IMG/VR virus record: IMGVR_UViG_3300043446_004613
Coordinates: 62,001-126,000 of that record
Direction: 5' to 3' (one strand)
DNA length: 64,000 bases
The notes beneath the pieces are model-generated. The model was not told where the DNA came from and made no database searches. It worked only from the letters and a program-made list of their open reading frames with translations. Positions 6,972 through 61,652 of this stretch are shown here, in pieces (within the stretch, counting starts at the first letter, position 1; every line of letters starts with the position of its first letter). Both the position numbers and the translations under genes were made by a program.

Positions 6972-7002
6972 ACAGTTCTAAGAACCGTATTTATTACACA
7001 TT

Positions 7003-25556: not shown

Positions 25557-25570
25557 TAACTACGTAGTTA
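25557..25570. promoter_or_regulatory. palindromic bidirectional motif TAACTACGTAGTTA between divergent genes
   Basis: Perfect 14-bp palindrome made of two back-to-back TAGTTA motifs; recurs at 41661. Confidence 0.7.
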
Positions 25571-37968: not shown

Positions 37969-38045
37969 CGCGGGGTGGAGCAGCCCGGTAGCTCGTCTGG
38001 CTCATAACCAGAAGGTCGTTGGTTCAAATCCAACCTCCGCAACCA
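37969..38045 (+). tRNA. tRNA-fMet (CAT), initiator type
   Basis: Full cloverleaf, C1:A72 mismatch, anticodon loop CTCATAA, encoded CCA. Confidence 0.95.
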
Positions 38046-38234: not shown

Positions 38235-38652
38235 GGGCGCGTACTGGTTTCGACTTTGATCGTAGCGGTGACGCCGACATGCCGAGGATGATGGTTGGCC
38301 TCGTAAAACAAACCGTCAAAAGTTAAATGCTGAAGAAGCTGAACTGAACAGCCTCCTCGCGGAAGCCGAAAGCATTTTCAACAATGCTGACGAAGTTCTC
38401 GCGAACGCTGAAGCTGTGGCGGCCTAACGGCCACCACCCGTTTACCGATCGATGCCTGCTGAATCGAGTAAACGCCATTAGCAGGACAGTGTGGATGCCG
38501 AGCAACGTCGGCGTTGGCCCGTGCCAGCCTATGGCGCAACCGGCAGGGTTTTCAGTTGTCGCTCTGATCCTGCCGCACAAAAGCGAAGAAGCATGTGAAT
38601 GGTGCAGTGTTACGGACATAGGACAGGGGTTCAACTCCCCTCGCGTCCACCA
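38235..38652 (+). ncRNA. ssrA: transfer-messenger RNA (tmRNA)
   Basis: 5' GGGCGCGTACTGGTTTCGAC; 3' GGGGTTCAACTCCCCTCGCGTCCACCA; G3-U wobble; pk1 CGAGG/CCTCGTAAA; tag ORF 38329-38427 ending AVAA*. Confidence 0.95.
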
Positions 38653-41660: not shown

Positions 41661-41676
41661 TTAACTACGTAGTTAA
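41661..41676. promoter_or_regulatory. palindromic bidirectional motif TTAACTACGTAGTTAA
   Basis: Perfect 16-bp palindrome between divergent genes; core identical to 25557-25570. Confidence 0.7.
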
Positions 41677-48910: not shown

Positions 48911-48938
48911 TTGACGCTTGGCTTATCGTGTATACACT
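48911..48938 (+). promoter_or_regulatory. sigma70-type early promoter, predicted leaderless transcript
   Basis: TTGACG-16 nt-TACACT with AT-rich UP region; ATG 6 nt after the -10 box. Confidence 0.65.
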
Positions 48939-48944
48939 GGAGCC

Positions 48945-50312
48945 ATGAAATATACGATATTCGAGCACAACTTCAGTGTCCTCACCAAGAAGCTGACGAA
49001 CCTCAATCAGAAGCTCACACGTATTGGCGCAAGCCCAGTGGCTTTTTCCGTTACAGGCCAGCACGATGTTCCGGCAAACGACAACCCGACCAAGCTGCTG
49101 CGCACGTTCGATATTGAAGTCAGCTGCGCCAATCCTAGCCACAACGGTTGGAAGTTTATCGCGACAATCGTTCATACGGACGAAGGCAACATCGTTCGCG
49201 CTGTTCCGGGCTTTGAAGTATCTGCTGAACACCGCGACCGCCCAACGTGGTGTGATCACTGCAAAACTAACCGTCAGCGCCACGACACGTATATTGTCCG
49301 GCATGATGACGGTCGCACCATGCAGGTCGGTTCATCCTGCCTCGGCGAATTCATCGGCTCAGCCAATCCAAACACCCTGTGCAAAGCTGCCGAACACATG
49401 CTCAACGCGTTCGACGTATGCGACGCTGCACAGAGCCGCAACTGGCTCGGCGGTGAAGGCGCGGGTGTTTACCGGATCGACCTCGACACATTCCTCGCTA
49501 ATGTCGCTGCTACCGTGCTGGCGCAAGGACAGTATGTTACGCGCAAGAGCGCCTATGAACAACATACCACAGCAACCAGCGACATCGCCCGCAACAGCCG
49601 CTACGAGGTTACACCTGAAGCGATTAAGCTTGCGACCGATGCCCGGAACTGGGTTTTGAACACGTATAGCCCTGCAATTACCGATGTTGATGGCCTCAGC
49701 GACGGTGCGATCATCGACATGATCACCGATAGTTTCAAGTCCAGTAATCGCCAGCTGTCCGACTTTGAGCACAATCTGCTCGCAGCTGCTCGCGCTGAAG
49801 CGATTGAACCCCGCCTTTGCGGTATTGCGGCATACATCGTAGAAGCCTATCGTCGTGCGCAGCCTAAGACCAAGCCGACACAGCTGGACGCTGTGGGTCT
49901 GGAACGTATTTTCCAGATGTTTGATAAGGCAAAGTCCAACAAGCTGGCACACCCCGGTATTCGCCTTGTGGACGACGCCGGACAACATTTGAAGCTATCA
50001 CTTGCGGCAGATTCATCGAAGAACGCGGGATACGTTTACGTAAAGGGCACCGAGTACTTTGGCAAAATCTCTCCGAAAGGTGAGTTCTTCCCGGTCAAAG
50101 CGTGCCCTAGCACTGTCCACGGCCAGCTGGCCGCGTTCGCTGCTGATCCTGAAACGATTGCAGCCAAGTACGGTAAGATGACCGGATGCTGCTGCTTTTG
50201 CAGCCGTAAGCTGGATGATGCGCGTTCAACTGAAGTCGGTTACGGCCCGGTCTGCGCTAAAAAATTCGGACTGAACTGGGGTAAGCAGCTTGAAGAAGTT
50301 TTAGCCGCGTAA
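48945..50312 (+). CDS. phage protein with C-terminal DUF6011-like Zn domain
   Basis: CDHC...R, VGSSCL, CCFCSRKL.D.RS..VGYGPVCAK. Confidence 0.75.
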   Translation: MKYTIFEHNFSVLTKKLTNLNQKLTRIGASPVAFSVTGQHDVPANDNPTKLLRTFDIEVSCANPSHNGWKFIATIVHTDEGNIVRAVPGFEVSAEHRDRPTWCDHCKTNRQRHDTYIVRHDDGRTMQVGSSCLGEFIGSANPNTLCKAAEHMLNAFDVCDAAQSRNWLGGEGAGVYRIDLDTFLANVAATVLAQGQYVTRKSAYEQHTTATSDIARNSRYEVTPEAIKLATDARNWVLNTYSPAITDVDGLSDGAIIDMITDSFKSSNRQLSDFEHNLLAAARAEAIEPRLCGIAAYIVEAYRRAQPKTKPTQLDAVGLERIFQMFDKAKSNKLAHPGIRLVDDAGQHLKLSLAADSSKNAGYVYVKGTEYFGKISPKGEFFPVKACPSTVHGQLAAFAADPETIAAKYGKMTGCCCFCSRKLDDARSTEVGYGPVCAKKFGLNWGKQLEEVLAA

Positions 50313-50704: not shown

Positions 50705-50712
50705 GTTGTTAA

Positions 50713-50865
50713 CTACATGCGCGGGCGCACCCTCTTAAAAGGATAGCCCTCTATGCTTGTGCTGGTTTTGCCGCAAGGGCACGTGAAACGGAATTTCTTC
50801 GCGTCCCAGAGCAACGTCGGAGAACCGCAGCAAGCTGTCGGTTGTTTTAGCTCTTTTGGCTTCAC
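50713..50865 (-). CDS. small Cys-rich protein (50 aa; not in ORF track)
   Basis: MKPKELKQPTACCGSPTLLWDAKKFRFTCPCGKTS...; GTGA overlap with HU stop. Confidence 0.55.
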   Translation of the reverse strand: MKPKELKQPTACCGSPTLLWDAKKFRFTCPCGKTSTSIEGYPFKRVRPRM

Positions 50866-51485: not shown

Positions 51486-53003
51486 TTATTCAAAGGTTTC
51501 TTTGCTGTGCTGTTCAATCAATGCGATAAGCTCAGCCAGCGGAGTATTATCGCGGGGATACCACGTCTTTTGTTTACCCGTCAGCTTCTTTTTAAGCTCA
51601 TCGCTGGGTTCGCAAAAACGAAGTTTCATCGGAGCTTCACTGTCGAGACAGAACAGAAAACAACGTTTACGCTCCGCCCCTACGTAGTGATACCAAAACT
51701 GACGACCTTGGCGTTCAGCACGGTTAAATGTCTCATCGAGGTGACTGATGATTTCTGCCTCATCGTTGCTGGTAATCCGCTGACTGGGTTCGTTGGTAGG
51801 CCGGGGCAGGTAGGCAGGCGTGCGCTGCTGGCGGGCACCCAGCAGCTTAGGGCTGATTGCCATCTTTGATAGCCCAAGATTTGCGGCTTCGACAGAGCAG
51901 GAGTGACGCAAGTCACAGGTGTTGCATTGGCGAGCGTTCTTGGAGTACAGGATGCCATAGCAGGCGAGTTTTCCGTTTCCGATCGAACGCGGAACCTTGG
52001 CGTTAACCTCAGTCAACATCTCGGCAACTTGTGGCGACACCTTGTCAAATTGATCACGGGCCGCCATCGTGAGCATGCGGCGTACGACCATACCGTCAAG
52101 GTCAGTTGGAATCTGTAGTCCGAAGACAAGTTTAAGCTGTGCGATGATTGCGTTTTGACGGGCTTCGCCGTCGTGTTGTTCTTGAGTTACCATACGATGC
52201 GCTAGAGTTTTGTTACGTATTGATAGAACAGCTTCTGAAAATAGTTCGGTCGAAATTCCGACAGCTTCCGCCATGTGCGTGAATTTTATTTTTACCGTCA
52301 CCTTTCCCTTGTTGCCTTTGCGCATCGCGTCCAATTCGGCATAGCAGCGTGCGTGCGCACTAGGGCTAATTAGTTCGTGAAAAACAAGCTTCTCTACAGG
52401 CGTAAGTTGGAAAGCAAACTCAGCCGCTGTTTGGCTAAATCCCCAATCAATGTCGTTTTCGTCGCATCCACTGTCTACGTCGTGCATGTCCGGCACTTGC
52501 AGTCCCAAATCAGGGTCGTCAAGTGATAGGTCAACGTTCTTGTGATACTCTGGCGTTTCCTCGCTGTCATGCGCAGCTTTAGGCGCGTCTAGTTTTTGCT
52601 GTTGACGCGGCGGCGGTTTTTGACCAGTGCGCTTTTCCGTAAAGCGGTATTTCTGAACACGGCTTTTGGTGTTGTTGTTTACACTTGTCTTGAAAAAGGC
52701 AAAAAACGAGTGACGAGTCGGACACTTATCGCCGCCCATGATGCCCTTGCTGATAAGTTTGCTGAGCACAAGGTTGCCTTCACCCATCAGTTCGTCAAAC
52801 TGAAGGTGCGGCGTAGTCTCGTCGCGGTATTGGTTAGCCACAGTGGCGATGACACGCTGTAGATCAGGCATCATCTCTTCCAACACCGGAGGTCTAAGCT
52901 TCGGGTCTTTGAAGATTAGGAATAAACGTTGACGCTTTGGGCGCAGTGCGCCAAGGATGTCACTCGTTAGCCGAATCTTCGTTGAAAATGCTGTGCTCGC
53001 CAT
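51486..53003 (-). CDS. sigma-factor-like protein with C-terminal Zn-binding extension
   Basis: Region 2-like LQRVIATVANQY...FDELMGEGNLVL...FFAFFK; HTH-like MAEAVGIS; CYG...CNTC...C. Confidence 0.55.
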   Translation of the reverse strand: MASTAFSTKIRLTSDILGALRPKRQRLFLIFKDPKLRPPVLEEMMPDLQRVIATVANQYRDETTPHLQFDELMGEGNLVLSKLISKGIMGGDKCPTRHSFFAFFKTSVNNNTKSRVQKYRFTEKRTGQKPPPRQQQKLDAPKAAHDSEETPEYHKNVDLSLDDPDLGLQVPDMHDVDSGCDENDIDWGFSQTAAEFAFQLTPVEKLVFHELISPSAHARCYAELDAMRKGNKGKVTVKIKFTHMAEAVGISTELFSEAVLSIRNKTLAHRMVTQEQHDGEARQNAIIAQLKLVFGLQIPTDLDGMVVRRMLTMAARDQFDKVSPQVAEMLTEVNAKVPRSIGNGKLACYGILYSKNARQCNTCDLRHSCSVEAANLGLSKMAISPKLLGARQQRTPAYLPRPTNEPSQRITSNDEAEIISHLDETFNRAERQGRQFWYHYVGAERKRCFLFCLDSEAPMKLRFCEPSDELKKKLTGKQKTWYPRDNTPLAELIALIEQHSKETFE

Positions 53004-53970
53004 AACGCCGTGGGTCGATAGTCTCGATCATCTCGTTGTACGTTTCTTGTGCTGAACGTACAGTTTTCTTGTGTTTGCGGGCGACCTCTGCGATCGAATC
53101 AGGGTCTAAATCTGTCTTGTCGATGTCACGCATCAACAAGTAATCAGAATGGATTTTTGACAGCTGTTGGATGGTAGGAAACTTCATCCGTTTGCCTCCG
53201 AACAGCACGCACAGCTTTTTAGCAACTTCAAACCCGAACTCATCTACAATATCGGGCAGATACGTGTAGCTTTGAGAAGCCAGCACAAGATCGTATTCTG
53301 TAAACGGGACGTAAGTTTGTTTATAGAAGGCTTGGCGCAAATTCACGATTGACCAGTCGTAAAAGAATTTGGATAAGTCGAAACTGATACCGTAGGCATA
53401 AGCTGCGCTGCGAATTGCGTCCTGCTTATCGTGCTCGTCGTCTATGATACACTGGATCAAGAAGCGGATAGCGCCAATCTCCTGTGGATCGCCCCATCGA
53501 CAGTTTAGCTCTCTAAGCTTGTTGTGCGTTTCCTGTACGGCATCGTGCTTGTCGACTTCGTGATCATCAACGCCGTAAAACTTTTCAAGGTTATCGCTGG
53601 TGACGTGGAATCGACGCCGGTACTGATTTACTTTCTGTAGTTCAGAACGAAAAGCGTTTTTAGCGCATTTGCTAAACCAAGAAAACAACTTGCCCTTTTT
53701 AGGCTGCCACGCTGCCAGCCACTTGATGACTTTTTCCTGTGCAGCGCTGACCAGTTGTGGAAGATCGACCGTGTAATGAAAATCTTCAAACTGCGCTAAA
53801 CGCTCAAACATCGCCGAGGAGCCGACGACAATGTTTTCAAGCACGAGCATCGCATCTTTGTGGCGACCAGCCGCGTTCAGCTGCTTCCACTGGATAGCCA
53901 GCGGCGTCAGTTGACTTGCCGGAAATATATGCTCTCCGTCAGCGGGTGTTGCTGGATTCTTCTTTGGCAT
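52960..53970 (-). CDS. sigma region 2-like domain fused to Mor-like activator domain
   Basis: WQPKKGKLFSWFSKCAKNAF; LPDIVDEFGFEVAKKLCVLFGG.RMKFP; C-terminal HTH. Confidence 0.6.
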   Translation of the reverse strand: MPKKNPATPADGEHIFPASQLTPLAIQWKQLNAAGRHKDAMLVLENIVVGSSAMFERLAQFEDFHYTVDLPQLVSAAQEKVIKWLAAWQPKKGKLFSWFSKCAKNAFRSELQKVNQYRRRFHVTSDNLEKFYGVDDHEVDKHDAVQETHNKLRELNCRWGDPQEIGAIRFLIQCIIDDEHDKQDAIRSAAYAYGISFDLSKFFYDWSIVNLRQAFYKQTYVPFTEYDLVLASQSYTYLPDIVDEFGFEVAKKLCVLFGGKRMKFPTIQQLSKIHSDYLLMRDIDKTDLDPDSIAEVARKHKKTVRSAQETYNEMIETIDPRRYGEHSIFNEDSANE

Positions 53971-54692: not shown

Positions 54693-54737
54693 TGGGAGAT
54701 CAAAAGTAAACATAAATCGTTATATTTTGATCTCCCA
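54693..54737. repeat. 13-bp perfect inverted repeat with 19-nt spacer (terminator or operator)
   Basis: TGGGAGATCAAAA...TTTTGATCTCCCA, intergenic. Confidence 0.7.
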
Positions 54738-54744
54738 TTTTGAT

Positions 54745-55554
54745 TTAATCTTCAGGTTCAGGGTCGCCTACGAGCACTGGTTTGTTACGGCGTGGCACAG
54801 GGCGAGCGAGAACACGTGGCTTTTCTTCCTCATCCTCATCCTCATCCGCGTTTGGCGCAGCATCTTCAGCTTCCTCACCTTTCGCCTTGGGTTGAGCTTT
54901 GGCCGCGTTTACGACACGACGAGACAAATAGTTCTCATCGGAGTCTTCTGCGCTTTTACTCTTCCCTTTGGGACGTGAAGGTGCTTCGTCCTGTTCAGGT
55001 GCTTCTTCCGCAGCAGGCGTTTCGTCCTGTGCAGCGGATTTACCTGCTTGGATGGCTTTTCCGGCTTGCACTGCTCCGGCGACGGCAGTCAACAGGGTGT
55101 GGCGTAGACCAGCCGCTTCAAAAAACCCCGACACACGCGGACTGTAAGGCCCAAAGCGCTTGATGACACAAGCCATGTCTTGAAAGTCCCACGGGCGCGT
55201 TTTTAACTTAACTCCGTCGTCCTTTACGACAACCTCGATCCGGGAAAGGTAACGGAACATCTCCGCGTTACGTGTTCTATCGTCGGACTTTTTCCAGAAG
55301 TGGTTGTCGACAACAAGGACGTAATTCGGACGCGACTCGACCAGAAGTCGGAACTCTTCTGGCATTTTCTTTAGCTTGAGTACTTCGCCTTTTGGTTCGA
55401 TTTCCTCTTGGTTCTCGTCCATACGGACGCATAGAACTGGTTCGATTACGACGTTATTCTCGATCAGCGGCGCAAACATCAGGTCGCTGTTCAGACACTT
55501 TTGGAACATGTCTGACAGTTCCTTTTCTTGCACGTATTCAATATGTGTTGGCAT
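54745..55554 (-). CDS. phage metallopeptidase-like domain (apparently degenerate) with acidic tail
   Basis: YVLVVD..FW...D..R.A...LSRI...DFQD...VIKRFG pattern without HExxH. Confidence 0.55.
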   Translation of the reverse strand: MPTHIEYVQEKELSDMFQKCLNSDLMFAPLIENNVVIEPVLCVRMDENQEEIEPKGEVLKLKKMPEEFRLLVESRPNYVLVVDNHFWKKSDDRTRNAEMFRYLSRIEVVVKDDGVKLKTRPWDFQDMACVIKRFGPYSPRVSGFFEAAGLRHTLLTAVAGAVQAGKAIQAGKSAAQDETPAAEEAPEQDEAPSRPKGKSKSAEDSDENYLSRRVVNAAKAQPKAKGEEAEDAAPNADEDEDEEEKPRVLARPVPRRNKPVLVGDPEPED

Positions 55555-56936: not shown

Positions 56937-58343
56937 TTAAGCGTCAGCGGGCATGGTGGTTAAACGGGCGCGAAGACGATTGGCTGATTCTGTGCCAGCA
57001 CCTTTACCGCGAGCCACTGGCGTTGGAACGTCGTCATCTTCTTCCGGTTCAGCATCTACCGGCGCAGCTGTCCGCTTCGGCGCGGGCGGCACTGGATCGG
57101 TGTCATCTTCAGGCAGGTTGTCTTCTTCTTCAGATTCCGCCTGCGGAGTTCCGGTTGCTTCGCTCTTAGCAGGGGTAGCTGCGGCGGAGCGCTTGGACGT
57201 CTGACCGAAGTTGCGAACCGGTGACTTTGCAGGTGGTTCGCTTTCTTCCGCAGGCTCGTTGGAAGCGTCATCATCGACGGGTTCTGAGCGACGGATAGGC
57301 TTGGGCTGGGCTTTGGGCGGCGTGCGCTGTGGGCCAAGATCACCGTCGTCATCATCGTCGACAGCTTCATGTGCCGGATTAGCGCGAGCAGGGCGGCGCG
57401 GAGCTTCAACTTCATGCTCAACCGGGGCGCTACGACGAGCACGCGGAGCTTCGTCTTGCTCGTCAGCTTCCGGTGCTGCACGGCGGCCTGCCGGACGAGC
57501 CGGTGCGTCATCAACGTCATCTTCAACCGCAGGACGTGCAGAGCGAGCCGGACGACGGAACGCTGCTTCGTCATCATCGCCGTCATCGGCGTAACCACCA
57601 CGAACAGCACCGCGACGCGGAACGTCGCCACCGCCGCGATGTGCGCTTTCCTGAAGCTTGTCAGCAAACTGCTGCATCTGTTCGGCGGTTGGAATTGTCA
57701 CTTTCGGCGGCTTGCACGCGGCCATGATCTTCTTGATGTGCTCGTTATACTTCGGATCATCCAGAGTGAAGATCGGAGCACTGTCTTGTTTATCAAGGCG
57801 CATACCCTTACCGCCCTTGCTGACGACAAAGTCATTGCCCTGCTCAAAGTCCAAAATGCTGTCCATACACTTGCGACCACCCGCCATGTAGAACGCTTTC
57901 AGTTCTTCAAACGTTGAGCGATAGTGCCAGAACTCGTAAGGGTTAAGCACTTCCGACAAAGGCTGCTGCACGCCGTCTTTGTCGAAAACCAAACAGTAGG
58001 TAAGGAACTGCGGCGTCGACATGGCTTTGTAGCCAATCTTGCTGATCGCTTCGTCGCGGTCGGCGTTCAGTTCATCGCAGACCGTGCAGACAGGGCACTC
58101 GCAGTCCGGGTCGCCGCCGAAGTCCATCGCCGTATTGCGCGGGCAGGTGATCGGAAGCTTGTTGTTCCAGTGGCGGGCGATACGGGCGAACCAGAGTCCA
58201 TCCGGCCCGAGTTTGGCGGGCAGGAAGCGGATCGTCCAGCTTTGACCGCGTTCCAGTTTGACGCGGCGGTTGCCGCGTGATTGAGATTGCAAGAAGGCGT
58301 CTTCGCCCTGCATGCGTTTGAGGATTTTAGGATCGATGCTCAT
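56937..58343 (-). CDS. gp32-like single-stranded DNA-binding protein with long low-complexity tail
   Basis: IRFLPA, Zn-type H...CPR...CPVC, DFEQGNDF; next to RecA. Confidence 0.75.
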   Translation of the reverse strand: MSIDPKILKRMQGEDAFLQSQSRGNRRVKLERGQSWTIRFLPAKLGPDGLWFARIARHWNNKLPITCPRNTAMDFGGDPDCECPVCTVCDELNADRDEAISKIGYKAMSTPQFLTYCLVFDKDGVQQPLSEVLNPYEFWHYRSTFEELKAFYMAGGRKCMDSILDFEQGNDFVVSKGGKGMRLDKQDSAPIFTLDDPKYNEHIKKIMAACKPPKVTIPTAEQMQQFADKLQESAHRGGGDVPRRGAVRGGYADDGDDDEAAFRRPARSARPAVEDDVDDAPARPAGRRAAPEADEQDEAPRARRSAPVEHEVEAPRRPARANPAHEAVDDDDDGDLGPQRTPPKAQPKPIRRSEPVDDDASNEPAEESEPPAKSPVRNFGQTSKRSAAATPAKSEATGTPQAESEEEDNLPEDDTDPVPPAPKRTAAPVDAEPEEDDDVPTPVARGKGAGTESANRLRARLTTMPADA

Positions 58344-60069: not shown

Positions 60070-60090
60070 GCGTTGTAAAAGAACAGGGTT

Positions 60091-61626: not shown

Positions 61627-61652
61627 AGTCTGTTCTGTAGAACAGAAAACTT

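What the first reader, a model, noticed from the sequence alone, without database searches (positions are those of the whole stretch)
51486..53970. Two adjacent divergent sigma-like factors, one fused to a Mor-like domain
Seen: 52960-53970 has a region-2-like segment (WQPKKGKLFSWFSKCAKNAF) plus a Mor-type module; 51486-53003 has region-2-like and HTH-like segments plus a Zn-binding extension. Knowledge: T4 gp55 is a region-2-only sigma that needs the co-activator gp33, and Mu Mor is a middle-gene activator. Inference: these two proteins read the GTTCTT and GTANTTA classes, with co-activator function built in by fusion. With the motifs they would form an undescribed transcription cascade.
Basis: partly seen in the sequence, partly recalled or inferred. 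Interest (0 to 1): 0.7.

Follow-up and report, generated by a model that had tools for sequence, protein, structure and literature searches.

The report
Two divergent phage sigma factors
A 211-kb uncultivated freshwater phage carries two adjacent, very divergent sigma-factor genes, each fused to extra domains, which most likely steer the host RNA polymerase to two phage-specific promoter classes that sit directly in front of start codons.

Summary
Window 52960-53970(-) (ORF-A, 336 aa) and 51486-53003(-) (ORF-B, 505 aa) are real, overlapping genes. The pair is conserved in a large clade of uncultivated jumbo phages.

ORF-A has a well-supported sigma region-2 fold (like E. coli sigmaE and T4 gp55), a middle helical domain, and a complete Mor-type HTH module. 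ORF-B has sigma2-like and sigma4-like domains, an acidic linker, an invariant Cys4 metal site and a DUF1801/YjbR-like end domain. All sequence-level matches to known families fall below curated cut-offs. The case rests on predicted folds, recurrent weak hits and a weak positive RNAP-docking test.

The two motif classes are real and conserved in relatives. GTTCTWW precedes replication genes and GTAGTTA precedes virion genes. Both lack a -35 element. Both obey the same spacing rule as the phage's host-type early promoters: the shortest and commonest gap between the -10-like hexamer and ATG/GTG is 6 nt. This implies leaderless mRNAs.

Which sigma reads which class is untested. Both genes lie in GTTCT-headed operons, so a simple one-to-one cascade is not shown. 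No phage RNA polymerase was found.

Verdict: a new variant of a known kind (phage-encoded sigma factors). It is interesting but rests on computation only.

The parts
52960..53970 (-). ORF-A, 336 aa: sigma-like factor with a C-terminal Mor-type module
   Evidence: ORF. 293 homologues, many of 334-337 aa, on contigs up to 245 kb. AF2 model pLDDT 77. The top 30 AFDB-SwissProt matches are all sigma factors.
53605..53916 (-). ORF-A residues 19-122: sigma region-2 (sigma2) domain
   Evidence: VIA-align Z 9.5-10.7 to sigmaE region 2, T4 gp55, SigW, CnrH and SigC. Pfam Sigma70_r2 in 10/36 relatives. PHROG 234.
53329..53550 (-). ORF-A residues 141-214: middle four-helix domain with an HTH-like helix pair (sigma4/sigma3-like, unresolved)
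   Evidence: Whole small sigma factors align to ORF-A 19-217 (ECF SigF 6-176, sigma-28 33-228; sigmaE 1or7). There is no sequence-level support.
53005..53316 (-). ORF-A residues 219-322: Mor-type HTH module
   Evidence: Pfam Mor 239-306. PHROG 836. 16/36 relatives hit Mor. Atlas structural TM 0.66 to Mor clusters.
51486..53003 (-). ORF-B, 505 aa: sigma2-sigma4-like factor with a long C-terminal extension
   Evidence: ORF. 146 homologues. 238 representative clusters. AF2 model pLDDT 76.
52644..52886 (-). ORF-B residues 40-120: sigma2-like domain
   Evidence: VIA Z 6.7, rmsd 2.6 A over 71 residues to RpoE (5uxx). Full-length sigma-28, sigmaB and ECF sigmas align across 40-272. Protein-language-model neighbours: 60/100 Sigma70_r2 clusters, score 0.95-0.96. 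hhalign to ORF-A region 2 is in register, E=0.027.
52446..52592 (-). ORF-B residues 138-186: acidic, disordered linker after the invariant FTEKRTGxKPPP motif
   Evidence: pLDDT <50. Alignment.
52188..52436 (-). ORF-B residues 190-272: sigma4-like HTH domain
   Evidence: sigmaF region 4 (8jzt_E), rmsd 2.3 A over 64/69 residues, Z 7.2. SigD and SigL region 4 also match.
51834..51971 (-). ORF-B residues 345-390: invariant Cys4 metal-binding module (C-X11-C-X2-C-X5-C)
   Evidence: C348, C360, C363 and C369 are invariant in 38 sequences. Only weak Zn-ribbon and Fe-S-motif alignments were found.
51489..51773 (-). ORF-B residues 411-505: alpha/beta domain of the DUF1801/YjbR type (also resembles the T4 MotA C-terminal domain)
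   Evidence: DR2400 (2a1v) Z 7.7, rmsd 3.0 A over 91 residues. MotA CTD Z 5.6. Atlas TM 0.55-0.62 to DUF1801/YjbR clusters.
60078..60084 (-). GTTCTTT (M-class) site 8 nt upstream of the ATG of the 410-aa gene, upstream in the same minus-strand gene array
61637..61643 (-). GTTCTAC (M-class) site inside the palindrome CTGTTCTACAGAACAG, at the divergent head of the minus-strand array that contains both sigma genes
54694..54736 (-). Stable hairpin between the metallopeptidase-like gene and the 240-aa gene that precedes ORF-A. It may be an internal terminator or attenuator.
   Evidence: dG -19.8 kcal/mol, z -5.7. Sequence.
50710..50716 (-). GTAGTTA (L-class) site 5 nt upstream of the ATG of the 112-aa gene, downstream of the sigma genes

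Best explanation
ORF-A and ORF-B are two phage-encoded, extremely divergent members of the sigma-70 family. Both have an ECF-sized (small, two-domain) sigma core, and each is extended by extra C-terminal domains. They are made together from a middle-phase operon that also encodes the recombinase and the SSB. They then bind the host RNA polymerase core through their sigma2 domains. This binding is inferred.

The phage has no polymerase of its own and uses three promoter classes:
- E (early): a host-type class with an UP element, TTGAC, and TGTATACAGT.
- M (middle): (C)TGTTCTWW, in front of replication and recombination genes.
- L (late): GTAGTTA, in front of virion genes.

M and L have no -35 element, as with T4 late promoters. 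In all three classes the -10-like hexamer ends 6 nt before the ATG/GTG, as both the minimum and the most common gap. Transcription would therefore start on the first base of the start codon and give leaderless mRNAs. This fits the near absence of Shine-Dalgarno sequences.

The most likely division of labour is that at least one of the two proteins is the late (GTAGTTA) sigma. Whether the other reads GTTCT sites or assists the first is open. The Mor-type module of ORF-A, and the Cys4 plus DUF1801-like extension of ORF-B, probably replace or regulate the contacts that a -35 element, a co-activator or an anti-sigma would otherwise provide. This last point is inferred.
For: Sigma identity:
- ORF-A's sigma2 fold is supported as set out in the observation check.
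- All top 30 AFDB-SwissProt matches for ORF-A are sigma factors, with probability up to 1.00. The top BFVD matches are phage sigma factors.
- ORF-B residues 40-272 align to sigma-28, sigmaB, sigmaF and ECF sigmas, with both domains in order. Its protein-language-model neighbours are Sigma70_r2 clusters.
- ORF-B 30-280 docks on E. coli beta' 1-400 plus beta 825-1000 with ipSAE 0.43, against 0.00 for the best of 3 controls. The tool's own verdict is 'weak support'. The runs agree in at least 62% of contacts and partner pLDDT is at least 57.

Conservation:
- One ORF-A immediately followed by one overlapping ORF-B in 4 of 4 whole genomes.
- Synteny with the SSB and UvsX genes is conserved.

No phage polymerase:
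- No Pfam RNA_pol or Rpb2_6 match in six frames.
- No PHROG polymerase among the large ORFs.
- No DxDGD-type motif in a large ORF.

Promoter reading of the motifs:
- Strong enrichment and orientation upstream of genes.
- 38/47 GTAGTTA sites are followed by a start codon, against 11% for permuted words.
- Shine-Dalgarno sequences are almost absent.
- 53% of GTTCT genes and 37% of GTAGTTA genes follow a strand switch, against 24% of other genes.
- Function split: L precedes the portal, sheath, baseplate wedge, tail-fibre-like and head-tail adaptor genes. M precedes DnaB, DNA polymerase, primase, two helicases, SbcC, SbcD and RusA.
- Textbook host-type promoters obey the same geometry. In relative G002, 17 of 23 TGATATAGT sites precede an ATG, 11 of them at exactly 6 nt, each with an UP element and a TTTACA -35. 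The minimum and mode are also 6 nt for M and L when counted from GTTCTW and nGTAGT.
- M and L motifs are conserved in relatives whose ORF-A is only 45-59% identical, while the host-type -10 differs between them.
- TATAAT is depleted, 17 sites against 80 expected.
Against: - Every sequence match to Sigma70_r2, gp55 (PHROG 234) and Mor is below the curated thresholds.
- Profile searches of the PDB give nothing significant.
- Foldseek E-values are only about 0.01-0.5, and whole-chain TM scores are low because the domains are oriented differently.
- VIA Z scores of 6-8 for ORF-B are in the range that helical proteins can reach by chance, according to the tool's own note.
- The docking result is 'weak' and used E. 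coli subunits, because the host is unknown.
- Both sigma genes lie in M-class operons, so M cannot be started by them alone.
- No -35-like element exists for the sigma4-like or Mor-like HTH domains to read.
- No RNA data could be found, so no transcription start is measured.
Confidence: 0.6

Rival explanations
1. The two proteins work as one unit on a single promoter class (the late GTAGTTA class). One acts as the promoter-recognising sigma and the other as its partner or co-activator. Known parallels, cited from memory, are T4 gp55 with gp33, SPO1 gp34 with gp33, and the two-subunit sigmaO-RsoA of Bacillus. The GTTCT class would then be read by the host holoenzyme helped by an early phage protein, or by a virion-delivered factor.
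For: The gene pair is always adjacent and overlapping, with one copy each in 4/4 genomes, which suggests coupled synthesis. Both genes are themselves in GTTCT-headed operons. No third sigma-like paralogue exists.
Against: Each protein by itself has a sigma2-like domain plus HTH domains, so each looks self-sufficient. No fused A-B protein was seen among 22 long homologues. No A-B interaction test could be run.
Confidence: 0.25
2. GTAGTTA and GTTCTWW are RNA-level translation-initiation signals (unusual ribosome-binding or factor-binding sites), not promoters. The two sigma-like proteins would then read other, unidentified promoters.
For: The motifs sit 4-9 nt before the start codon, which is the place of a Shine-Dalgarno sequence. 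Canonical SD is almost absent. Motif-bearing genes inside co-directional arrays have small gaps just large enough for the motif.
Against: - Unmistakable host-type promoters (UP, -35, extended -10) occupy the same position with the same 6-nt rule, so this position is a promoter position in these phages.
- The two motifs split by gene function, as temporal promoter classes do.
- They are enriched at strand switches.
- Back-to-back palindromic pairs fill 18-26-bp divergent intergenic regions, which leaves no room for separate promoters.
- More than half of the genes have neither motif nor SD, so translation does not require the motif.
Confidence: 0.12
3. ORF-A and/or ORF-B are not sigma factors. 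They would be helical HTH transcription regulators, or anti-sigma or sigma-appropriating proteins, that only resemble sigma domains.
For: No curated family threshold is reached. ORF-B structural scores are moderate. ORF-A's best sequence match is to an activator family, Mor.
Against: The sigma2 match of ORF-A covers the whole domain at 2.6 A. The hit lists in three libraries are almost purely sigma factors. The ORF-B domain order sigma2-linker-sigma4 matches small sigmas. Docking to beta'/beta is above all controls.
Confidence: 0.1
4. A cryptic, very divergent phage RNA polymerase among the unannotated large ORFs (725-2127 aa) reads the motifs.
For: Eight large ORFs have no PHROG match at all. 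crAss-like and phiKZ-like polymerases are known to escape profile searches (from memory).
Against: No Pfam polymerase match in six frames. No catalytic D-x-D-G/I-D motif in any large ORF. Several of these ORFs are preceded by the late motif, as virion proteins are.
Confidence: 0.03

Closest known systems
T4 late transcription: gp55 (sigma2-only sigma) with gp33 co-activator and the gp45 clamp, at -10-only promoters (TATAAATA)
   Same: ORF-A's sigma2 domain superposes on gp55 (7d7c_F, Z 9.5, 17% identity) and weakly hits the gp55 PHROG. The phage promoters also consist of a -10-like element with no -35.
   Different: ORF-A is nearly twice as long as gp55 and carries two further HTH-type domains. 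No gp33 or clamp partner was identified. The replication module is not T4-like: it has a phrog_17-type polymerase and a DnaB helicase. The promoter sequences differ and abut the start codon.
Bacillus phage SPO1 cascade (host sigmaA early, gp28 middle, gp33/gp34 late); knowledge from memory, mentioned in PMC13401047
   Same: It has three temporal promoter classes, host polymerase throughout, and phage sigma factors made in the preceding phase.
   Different: In SPO1 each class has -35 and -10 elements and ordinary leaders. Here the phage classes are -10-only and leaderless, and the two sigma genes are adjacent in one operon.
ECF (group 4) sigma factors with C-terminal extensions (ECF41, ECF42, ECF44 and similar; PMC7826278 notes that phage sigmas are divergent and swap domains)
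   Same: Both have a two-domain sigma2-sigma4 core of about 200-270 residues followed by a fused extra domain. ORF-B's Cys-rich module recalls the Cys-rich regulatory extensions.
   Different: No ECF Pfam model reaches threshold. No ECF-type -35 (GGAAC-like) element is present. The fused domains (Mor-type; Cys4 plus DUF1801/YjbR-like) are not the ones described for ECF groups in that paper.
Phage Mu Mor / C activators (Pfam PF08765)
   Same: ORF-A residues 219-322 match the Mor family in sequence (weakly but recurrently) and in predicted fold.
   Different: Mor is a small stand-alone dimeric activator that binds a dyad upstream of -35 and works with host sigma-70 (from memory). Here the module is the C-terminal domain of a sigma-like protein, and no conserved upstream site exists.
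Jumbo-phage 'group 2' sigma factors (Iyer et al. 2021, PMC7824862)
   Same: These are jumbo phages without their own polymerase that encode sigma factors to recruit the host enzyme.
   Different: That group is T4-like, with a family B polymerase, gp23 capsid and gp33 orthologue. This clade has no match in 50,697 GenBank phage records and has a different replication module.

Membership tests
Sigma-70 family (ECF-like / group 4) | sigma2 domain fold (regions 2.1-2.4) | tested here: met
   ORF-A: rmsd 2.6 A over all 91 residues of sigmaE region 2, Z 9.5-10.7. ORF-B: Z 6.7, rmsd 2.6 A over 71 residues, plus full-length sigma alignments. The ORF-B match is weaker.
Sigma-70 family (ECF-like / group 4) | sigma4 HTH domain C-terminal to sigma2 | tested here: inconclusive
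   ORF-B 190-272 fits sigmaF, SigD and SigL region 4 (rmsd 2.3-2.9 A). The ORF-A middle domain is placed on sigma4 by Foldseek and VIA but has no sequence support.
Sigma-70 family (ECF-like / group 4) | Pfam Sigma70_r2 / r4 score above the gathering cut-off | tested here: not met
   There is no hit for either query. Relatives reach at best E=5e-4 (10/36 for ORF-A, 1/38 for ORF-B). A six-frame family search of the genome is negative.
Sigma-70 family (ECF-like / group 4) | binds RNA polymerase core (beta' clamp helices, beta flap) | tested here: inconclusive
   ORF-B 30-280 against E. coli fragments gives ipSAE 0.43, with 0.00 for the best control. The tool calls this weak support.
Sigma-70 family (ECF-like / group 4) | confers promoter-specific initiation | not testable with these tools
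   This needs in vitro transcription or TSS mapping. No RNA run was listed.
T4 gp55 late sigma family | sigma2-only protein of about 185 aa working with gp33 and a sliding clamp | tested here: not met
   ORF-A is 336 aa with two further domains. PHROG 234 gives only E=0.0028. No gp33 or clamp was identified among the ORFs scanned, and this was not an exhaustive search.
Mor/C transcription activator family (PF08765) | Pfam Mor score above the gathering cut-off (24.9 bits) | tested here: not met
   The query scores 19.2 bits. 16/36 relatives hit at E<0.1 with a best E of 2.5e-4. One relative (P0016) carries a precomputed PF08765 call.
Mor/C transcription activator family (PF08765) | Mor-type fold (helical domain with C-terminal HTH) | tested here: met
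   Atlas structural match over residues 219-312 to clusters that are 100% and 97% Mor, TM 0.66 and 0.46 by the hit. A BFVD Mor protein has probability 0.93.
Mor/C transcription activator family (PF08765) | stand-alone small activator that binds a conserved dyad upstream of the promoter | tested here: not met
   The module is fused to a sigma-like protein. No conserved sequence lies upstream of either motif class in four genomes.
WhiB-like (Wbl) Fe-S proteins (considered for the ORF-B Cys4 module) | Cys-Xn-Cys-X2-Cys-X5-Cys motif with Wbl sequence or fold similarity | tested here: inconclusive
   The Cys spacing C-X11-C-X2-C-X5-C fits the pattern. However, there is no Pfam Whib hit and no PDB WhiB hit. 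Only weak eL37 Zn-ribbon (E=0.56) and Fe-hydrogenase Fe-S-motif (E=0.71) alignments were found.
T4 MotA C-terminal DNA-binding domain / DUF1801-YjbR fold (ORF-B 411-505) | alpha/beta fold of the family | tested here: met
   DR2400 Z 7.7, rmsd 3.0 A over 91 residues. YdhG Z 6.3. MotA CTD Z 5.6. Atlas TM 0.55-0.62. This shows the fold only; no function is shown.

The most novel reading that the evidence does not exclude
A whole clade of uncultivated jumbo phages runs a fully leaderless, three-tier transcription programme on host RNA polymerase. In it, -10-only promoters are activated without a sliding clamp or a separate co-activator. ORF-A would unite a gp55-type sigma2 domain with a Mor-type activator module in one polypeptide. 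ORF-B would be a second sigma whose activity is gated by a built-in Cys4 (Zn or Fe-S) and DUF1801-like sensor domain. Each would read one of the two phage motif classes.
Probability: 0.2. Interest if true: 0.8.

Novelty: new variant of a known kind. Interest (0 to 1): 0.6.

Why it matters
Phage-encoded sigma factors are a classic way of taking over the host polymerase. The known examples come from a few cultivated phages.

This pair of sigma-like proteins is invisible to curated family models. It carries domain fusions not described for sigma factors: a Mor-type module, and a Cys4 plus DUF1801-like module. It is conserved in hundreds of environmental jumbo-phage contigs.

The genome also offers an unusually clean, testable promoter grammar. 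Three classes share one spacing rule that puts the transcription start on the start codon. If confirmed, it would give new orthogonal sigma/promoter pairs. It would also be a natural example of genome-wide leaderless expression, and a case where -10-only promoters work without the T4-type clamp machinery.

Tried and rejected
- DNA and protein searches of 50,697 GenBank phage records found nothing. No cultivated relative could be used.
- Profile searches of PDB sequences with the full families and with sub-domains gave no significant hit.
- Pfam scans of the short stand-alone ORF-B-like proteins, the ORF-A middle domain and the Cys4 module gave no transitive link to Sigma70_r4, Sigma70_r3 or WhiB.
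- The WhiB-like reading of the Cys4 module was therefore dropped to 'unresolved metal site'.
- A-versus-B profile comparison aligns region 2 in register, but weakly (E=0.027).
- A search for RNA sequencing runs found none listed, so transcription starts could not be measured and read laying was not used.
- Host inference from the phage NAD-ligase failed. The best matches are 30-40% identical and spread over many phyla. Only one tRNA was found.
- A Bacteroidota-type promoter (TTTG...TAnnTTTG) was considered because SD is absent. It was rejected: 2 sites against 1.3 expected.
- The exact heptamer GTAGTTA is not enriched in every relative. De novo k-mer analysis was needed to show that TAGTTA and GTTCT are conserved upstream of starts.
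- A Rosetta-stone A-B fusion was looked for and not found.
Full report
**Context**

The window is bases 62001-126000 of a 211,113-bp IMG/VR virus record, estimated 93% complete. The same DNA is held by runs of a freshwater metagenome. GC content is about 52%.

The genome encodes:
- a myovirus-type virion: tail sheath, baseplate wedge, portal, major head protein, protease and head-tail adaptor;
- its own replication and recombination set: DNA polymerase, DnaB, primase, helicases, NAD-ligase, UvsX-like recombinase, gp32-like SSB, SbcCD and RusA.

No record among 50,697 GenBank phage genomes resembles the two genes, by DNA or by protein.

**The observation**

ORF-A (52960-53970, minus strand, 336 aa) and ORF-B (51486-53003, minus strand, 505 aa) overlap by 44 nt.

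ORF-A has 293 homologues. Most are 334-337 aa and 57-76% identical, on contigs up to 245 kb. ORF-B has 146 homologues in the same search type and 238 representative clusters in the exhaustive search.

In four whole genomes of the clade there is exactly one ORF-A, immediately followed by one overlapping ORF-B, and no further paralogue. The neighbourhood is conserved: glycosyltransferase, a 410-aa protein, SSB, UvsX, a 180-265-aa protein, ORF-A, ORF-B, then a small membrane protein.

**ORF-A**

Sequence signals are weak but recur across the family:
- Pfam Mor, E=0.0013, below the cut-off.
- PHROG 836 'late transcriptional activator', E=1e-4, and PHROG 234 'late sigma transcription factor', E=0.0028.
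- Among 36 relatives, 16 hit Mor and 10 hit Sigma70_r2.

The AlphaFold2 model (pLDDT 77) gives the stronger evidence:
- Residues 19-122 superpose on E. coli sigmaE region 2 (rmsd 2.6 A over the whole 91-residue domain) and on T4 gp55, SigW, CnrH and SigC, with Z 9-10.7.
- The 50 best Foldseek PDB matches are almost all sigma factors.
- All 30 best AFDB-SwissProt matches are sigma factors.
- The best BFVD matches are phage sigma factors.

Several complete small sigmas (ECF SigF, sigma-28, sigmaE) align to residues 19-217 alone. The middle domain (141-214) may therefore stand in for sigma4 or sigma3, but no sequence search supports this.

Residues 219-322 match Mor-family clusters structurally, with TM 0.66. 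The Pfam Mor profile maps wholly within this domain.

ORF-A is thus a small sigma-like core with a complete Mor-type module fused to its C-terminus.

**ORF-B**

No Pfam or PHROG family is hit. The model (pLDDT 76) shows these parts:
- a sigma2-like domain (40-120);
- an invariant FTEKRTGxKPPP motif followed by a disordered acidic linker (138-186);
- a sigma4-like HTH (190-272; sigmaF region 4 fits at rmsd 2.3 A over 64 of 69 residues);
- a helical segment;
- a Cys4 module with four invariant cysteines;
- an alpha/beta domain (411-505) of the DUF1801/YjbR type, which also resembles the T4 MotA C-terminal domain.

Further support:
- Full-length sigma-28, sigmaB and ECF sigmas align across 40-272.
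- Protein-language-model neighbours of residues 30-280 are mostly Sigma70_r2 clusters, with scores of 0.95-0.96.
- Profile comparison with ORF-A aligns region 2.2-2.4 in register, but weakly.
- Docking of residues 30-280 on E. coli beta' 1-400 and beta 825-1000 scored 0.43, against 0.00 for the best of three controls. The tool rates this as weak support. The runs agree in at least 62% of contacts and partner pLDDT is at least 57.

The metal in the Cys4 module cannot be told. There were only faint Zn-ribbon and Fe-S-motif alignments and no WhiB match.

**No phage polymerase**

- Six-frame searches for T7-type and multisubunit polymerase domains are negative, while the control genomes ring for the latter.
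- None of the large ORFs hits a polymerase PHROG.
- No large ORF has a D-x-D-G/I-D catalytic motif.

A very divergent enzyme cannot be fully excluded.

**The motifs**

Genome-wide, GTAGTTA occurs 47 times. Thirty of these lie within 80 nt upstream of a co-oriented gene, where 2.4 are expected. Thirty-eight are followed within 4-9 nt by an ATG/GTG that opens a long ORF, against 11% for permuted heptamers. Most of the rest precede GTG starts that my gene calls missed. GTTCT(T/A)(T/A) behaves likewise, with spacers of 5-8 nt.

Canonical Shine-Dalgarno sequences are almost absent.

Neither class has any conserved upstream (-35-like) sequence in any of four genomes.

The classes split by function:
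- GTAGTTA precedes the portal, sheath, baseplate wedge, tail-fibre-like and head-tail adaptor genes, and several very large unannotated ORFs.
- GTTCT precedes DnaB, DNA polymerase, primase, two helicases, SbcC, SbcD, RusA and a glycosyltransferase.

Of GTTCT genes, 53% are the first gene after a strand switch, as are 37% of GTAGTTA genes. Only 24% of motif-less genes are, and those are mostly tightly coupled to the gene before them.

**A third class, and the spacing rule**

A palindrome, TGTATACA, marks about 13 intergenic sites that have an A/T-rich UP-like stretch, a TTGAC box and TGTATACAGT. This is a host sigma-70-type promoter with a TAnnnT hexamer.

In relatives the same class is textbook. 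G002 has UP, TTTACA, about 16 nt, then TGATATAGT. Seventeen of its 23 sites precede an ATG, 11 of them at exactly 6 nt. G004 has TGGTATATT with the same rule. Six nucleotides after the hexamer places +1 on the A of the ATG, so these early mRNAs would be leaderless.

Counted from GTTCTW and from nGTAGT, the other two classes have the same minimum and the same mode of 6 nt.

TATAAT is strongly depleted, 17 sites against 80 expected.

De novo k-mer analysis shows that GTTCT and TAGTTA are conserved upstream of starts in relatives whose ORF-A is only 45-59% identical, while the host-type -10 sequence differs between them.

I therefore read both phage-specific motifs as -10-only promoters of leaderless or near-leaderless mRNAs. 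This is inferred. No RNA run was listed, so no start site is measured.

**How the parts fit**

The sigma genes have no motif directly upstream. They lie in a long minus-strand array headed by GTTCT-type sites at about 60080 and 61640. A stable hairpin at 54694-54736 lies before the gene that precedes ORF-A. In G002 a GTTCT-type site lies directly before ORF-A.

The proteins are therefore middle-phase products, well placed to switch on the late GTAGTTA class. They cannot by themselves explain the first firing of the GTTCT class. A one-sigma-per-class cascade, a joint late factor, and a positive-feedback loop all remain possible.

**Comparison and verdict**

Phage sigma factors, -10-only late promoters (T4) and leaderless phage transcripts (noted in PMC5312081) are all known. 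Jumbo phages that lack a polymerase but encode sigma factors have been described (PMC7824862), and phage sigmas are known to be divergent and to swap domains (PMC7826278).

New here:
- the particular architectures (sigma core plus Mor module; sigma core plus Cys4 plus DUF1801-like domain);
- their conservation as an overlapping pair in a large uncultivated clade;
- the three-class, start-codon-abutting promoter grammar.

This is a new variant of a known kind. The identification as sigma factors is likely: about 0.9 for ORF-A and about 0.75 for ORF-B. The promoter reading of the motifs is likely, at about 0.75. The pairing of each protein with one class is unproven, at about 0.3.

Noticed in passing
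whole genome; in the window e.g. 48929-48936 (upstream of the DUF6011 gene at 48945): There is a third, host-type early promoter class: an A/T-rich UP-like stretch, TTGAC, about 14-16 nt, then TGTATACAGT, ending 5-9 nt before the ATG. About 13 sites exist. Relatives have TGATATAGT or TGGTATATT with exactly 6 nt to the ATG, which implies leaderless early mRNAs.
   Followed up: yes
whole genome (G000), 40 sites: The palindrome TGTATACA occurs 40 times, against roughly 3 expected. Only 15 sites are intergenic promoters. The other 25 lie inside coding regions without a -35 box and are unexplained. They could be sites for a DNA-binding protein or a modification enzyme.
   Followed up: partly
whole genome (G000): TATAAT is strongly depleted (17 sites against 80 expected), and TGnTATAAT and TATAAATA are absent. 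This looks like selection against stray host -10 elements.
   Followed up: no
window 25557-25570, 41662-41675, 6975-6985 and about 61630-61645: Back-to-back palindromic motif pairs (TAACTACGTAGTTA, GTTCTAAGAAC, CTGTTCTACAGAACAG) fill divergent intergenic regions of only 18-26 bp, with a start codon on each side.
   Followed up: partly
window 37969-38045 and 38235-38652: A single tRNA-Met (CAT) is the only tRNA in the genome. Next to it is an ARAGORN tmRNA-like call with an atypical tag peptide, which is possibly spurious.
   Followed up: no
window 54694-54736 (-): A 13-bp-stem hairpin (dG -19.8 kcal/mol, z -5.7) lies between the metallopeptidase-like gene and the 240-aa gene that precedes ORF-A. 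It may be an internal terminator or a processing site.
   Followed up: partly
homologues P0318, P0023, P0301, P0308, P0281, P0298: One ORF-B homologue (899 aa) has an insertion of about 400 aa inside the sigma2 region. One ORF-A homologue is a tandem partial duplication. Several ORF-B homologues duplicate the sigma4-like or the C-terminal DUF1801-like domain. Stand-alone proteins of 200-290 aa match only the sigma2-sigma4 half of ORF-B.
   Followed up: partly
window 54745-55554 (-) and 56937-58343 (-): A protein with a phage metallopeptidase domain (PF18894) and a long charged tail, and a gp32-like SSB with a long acidic, Pro/Ala-rich C-terminal half, lie in the same operon as the sigma genes.
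   Followed up: no
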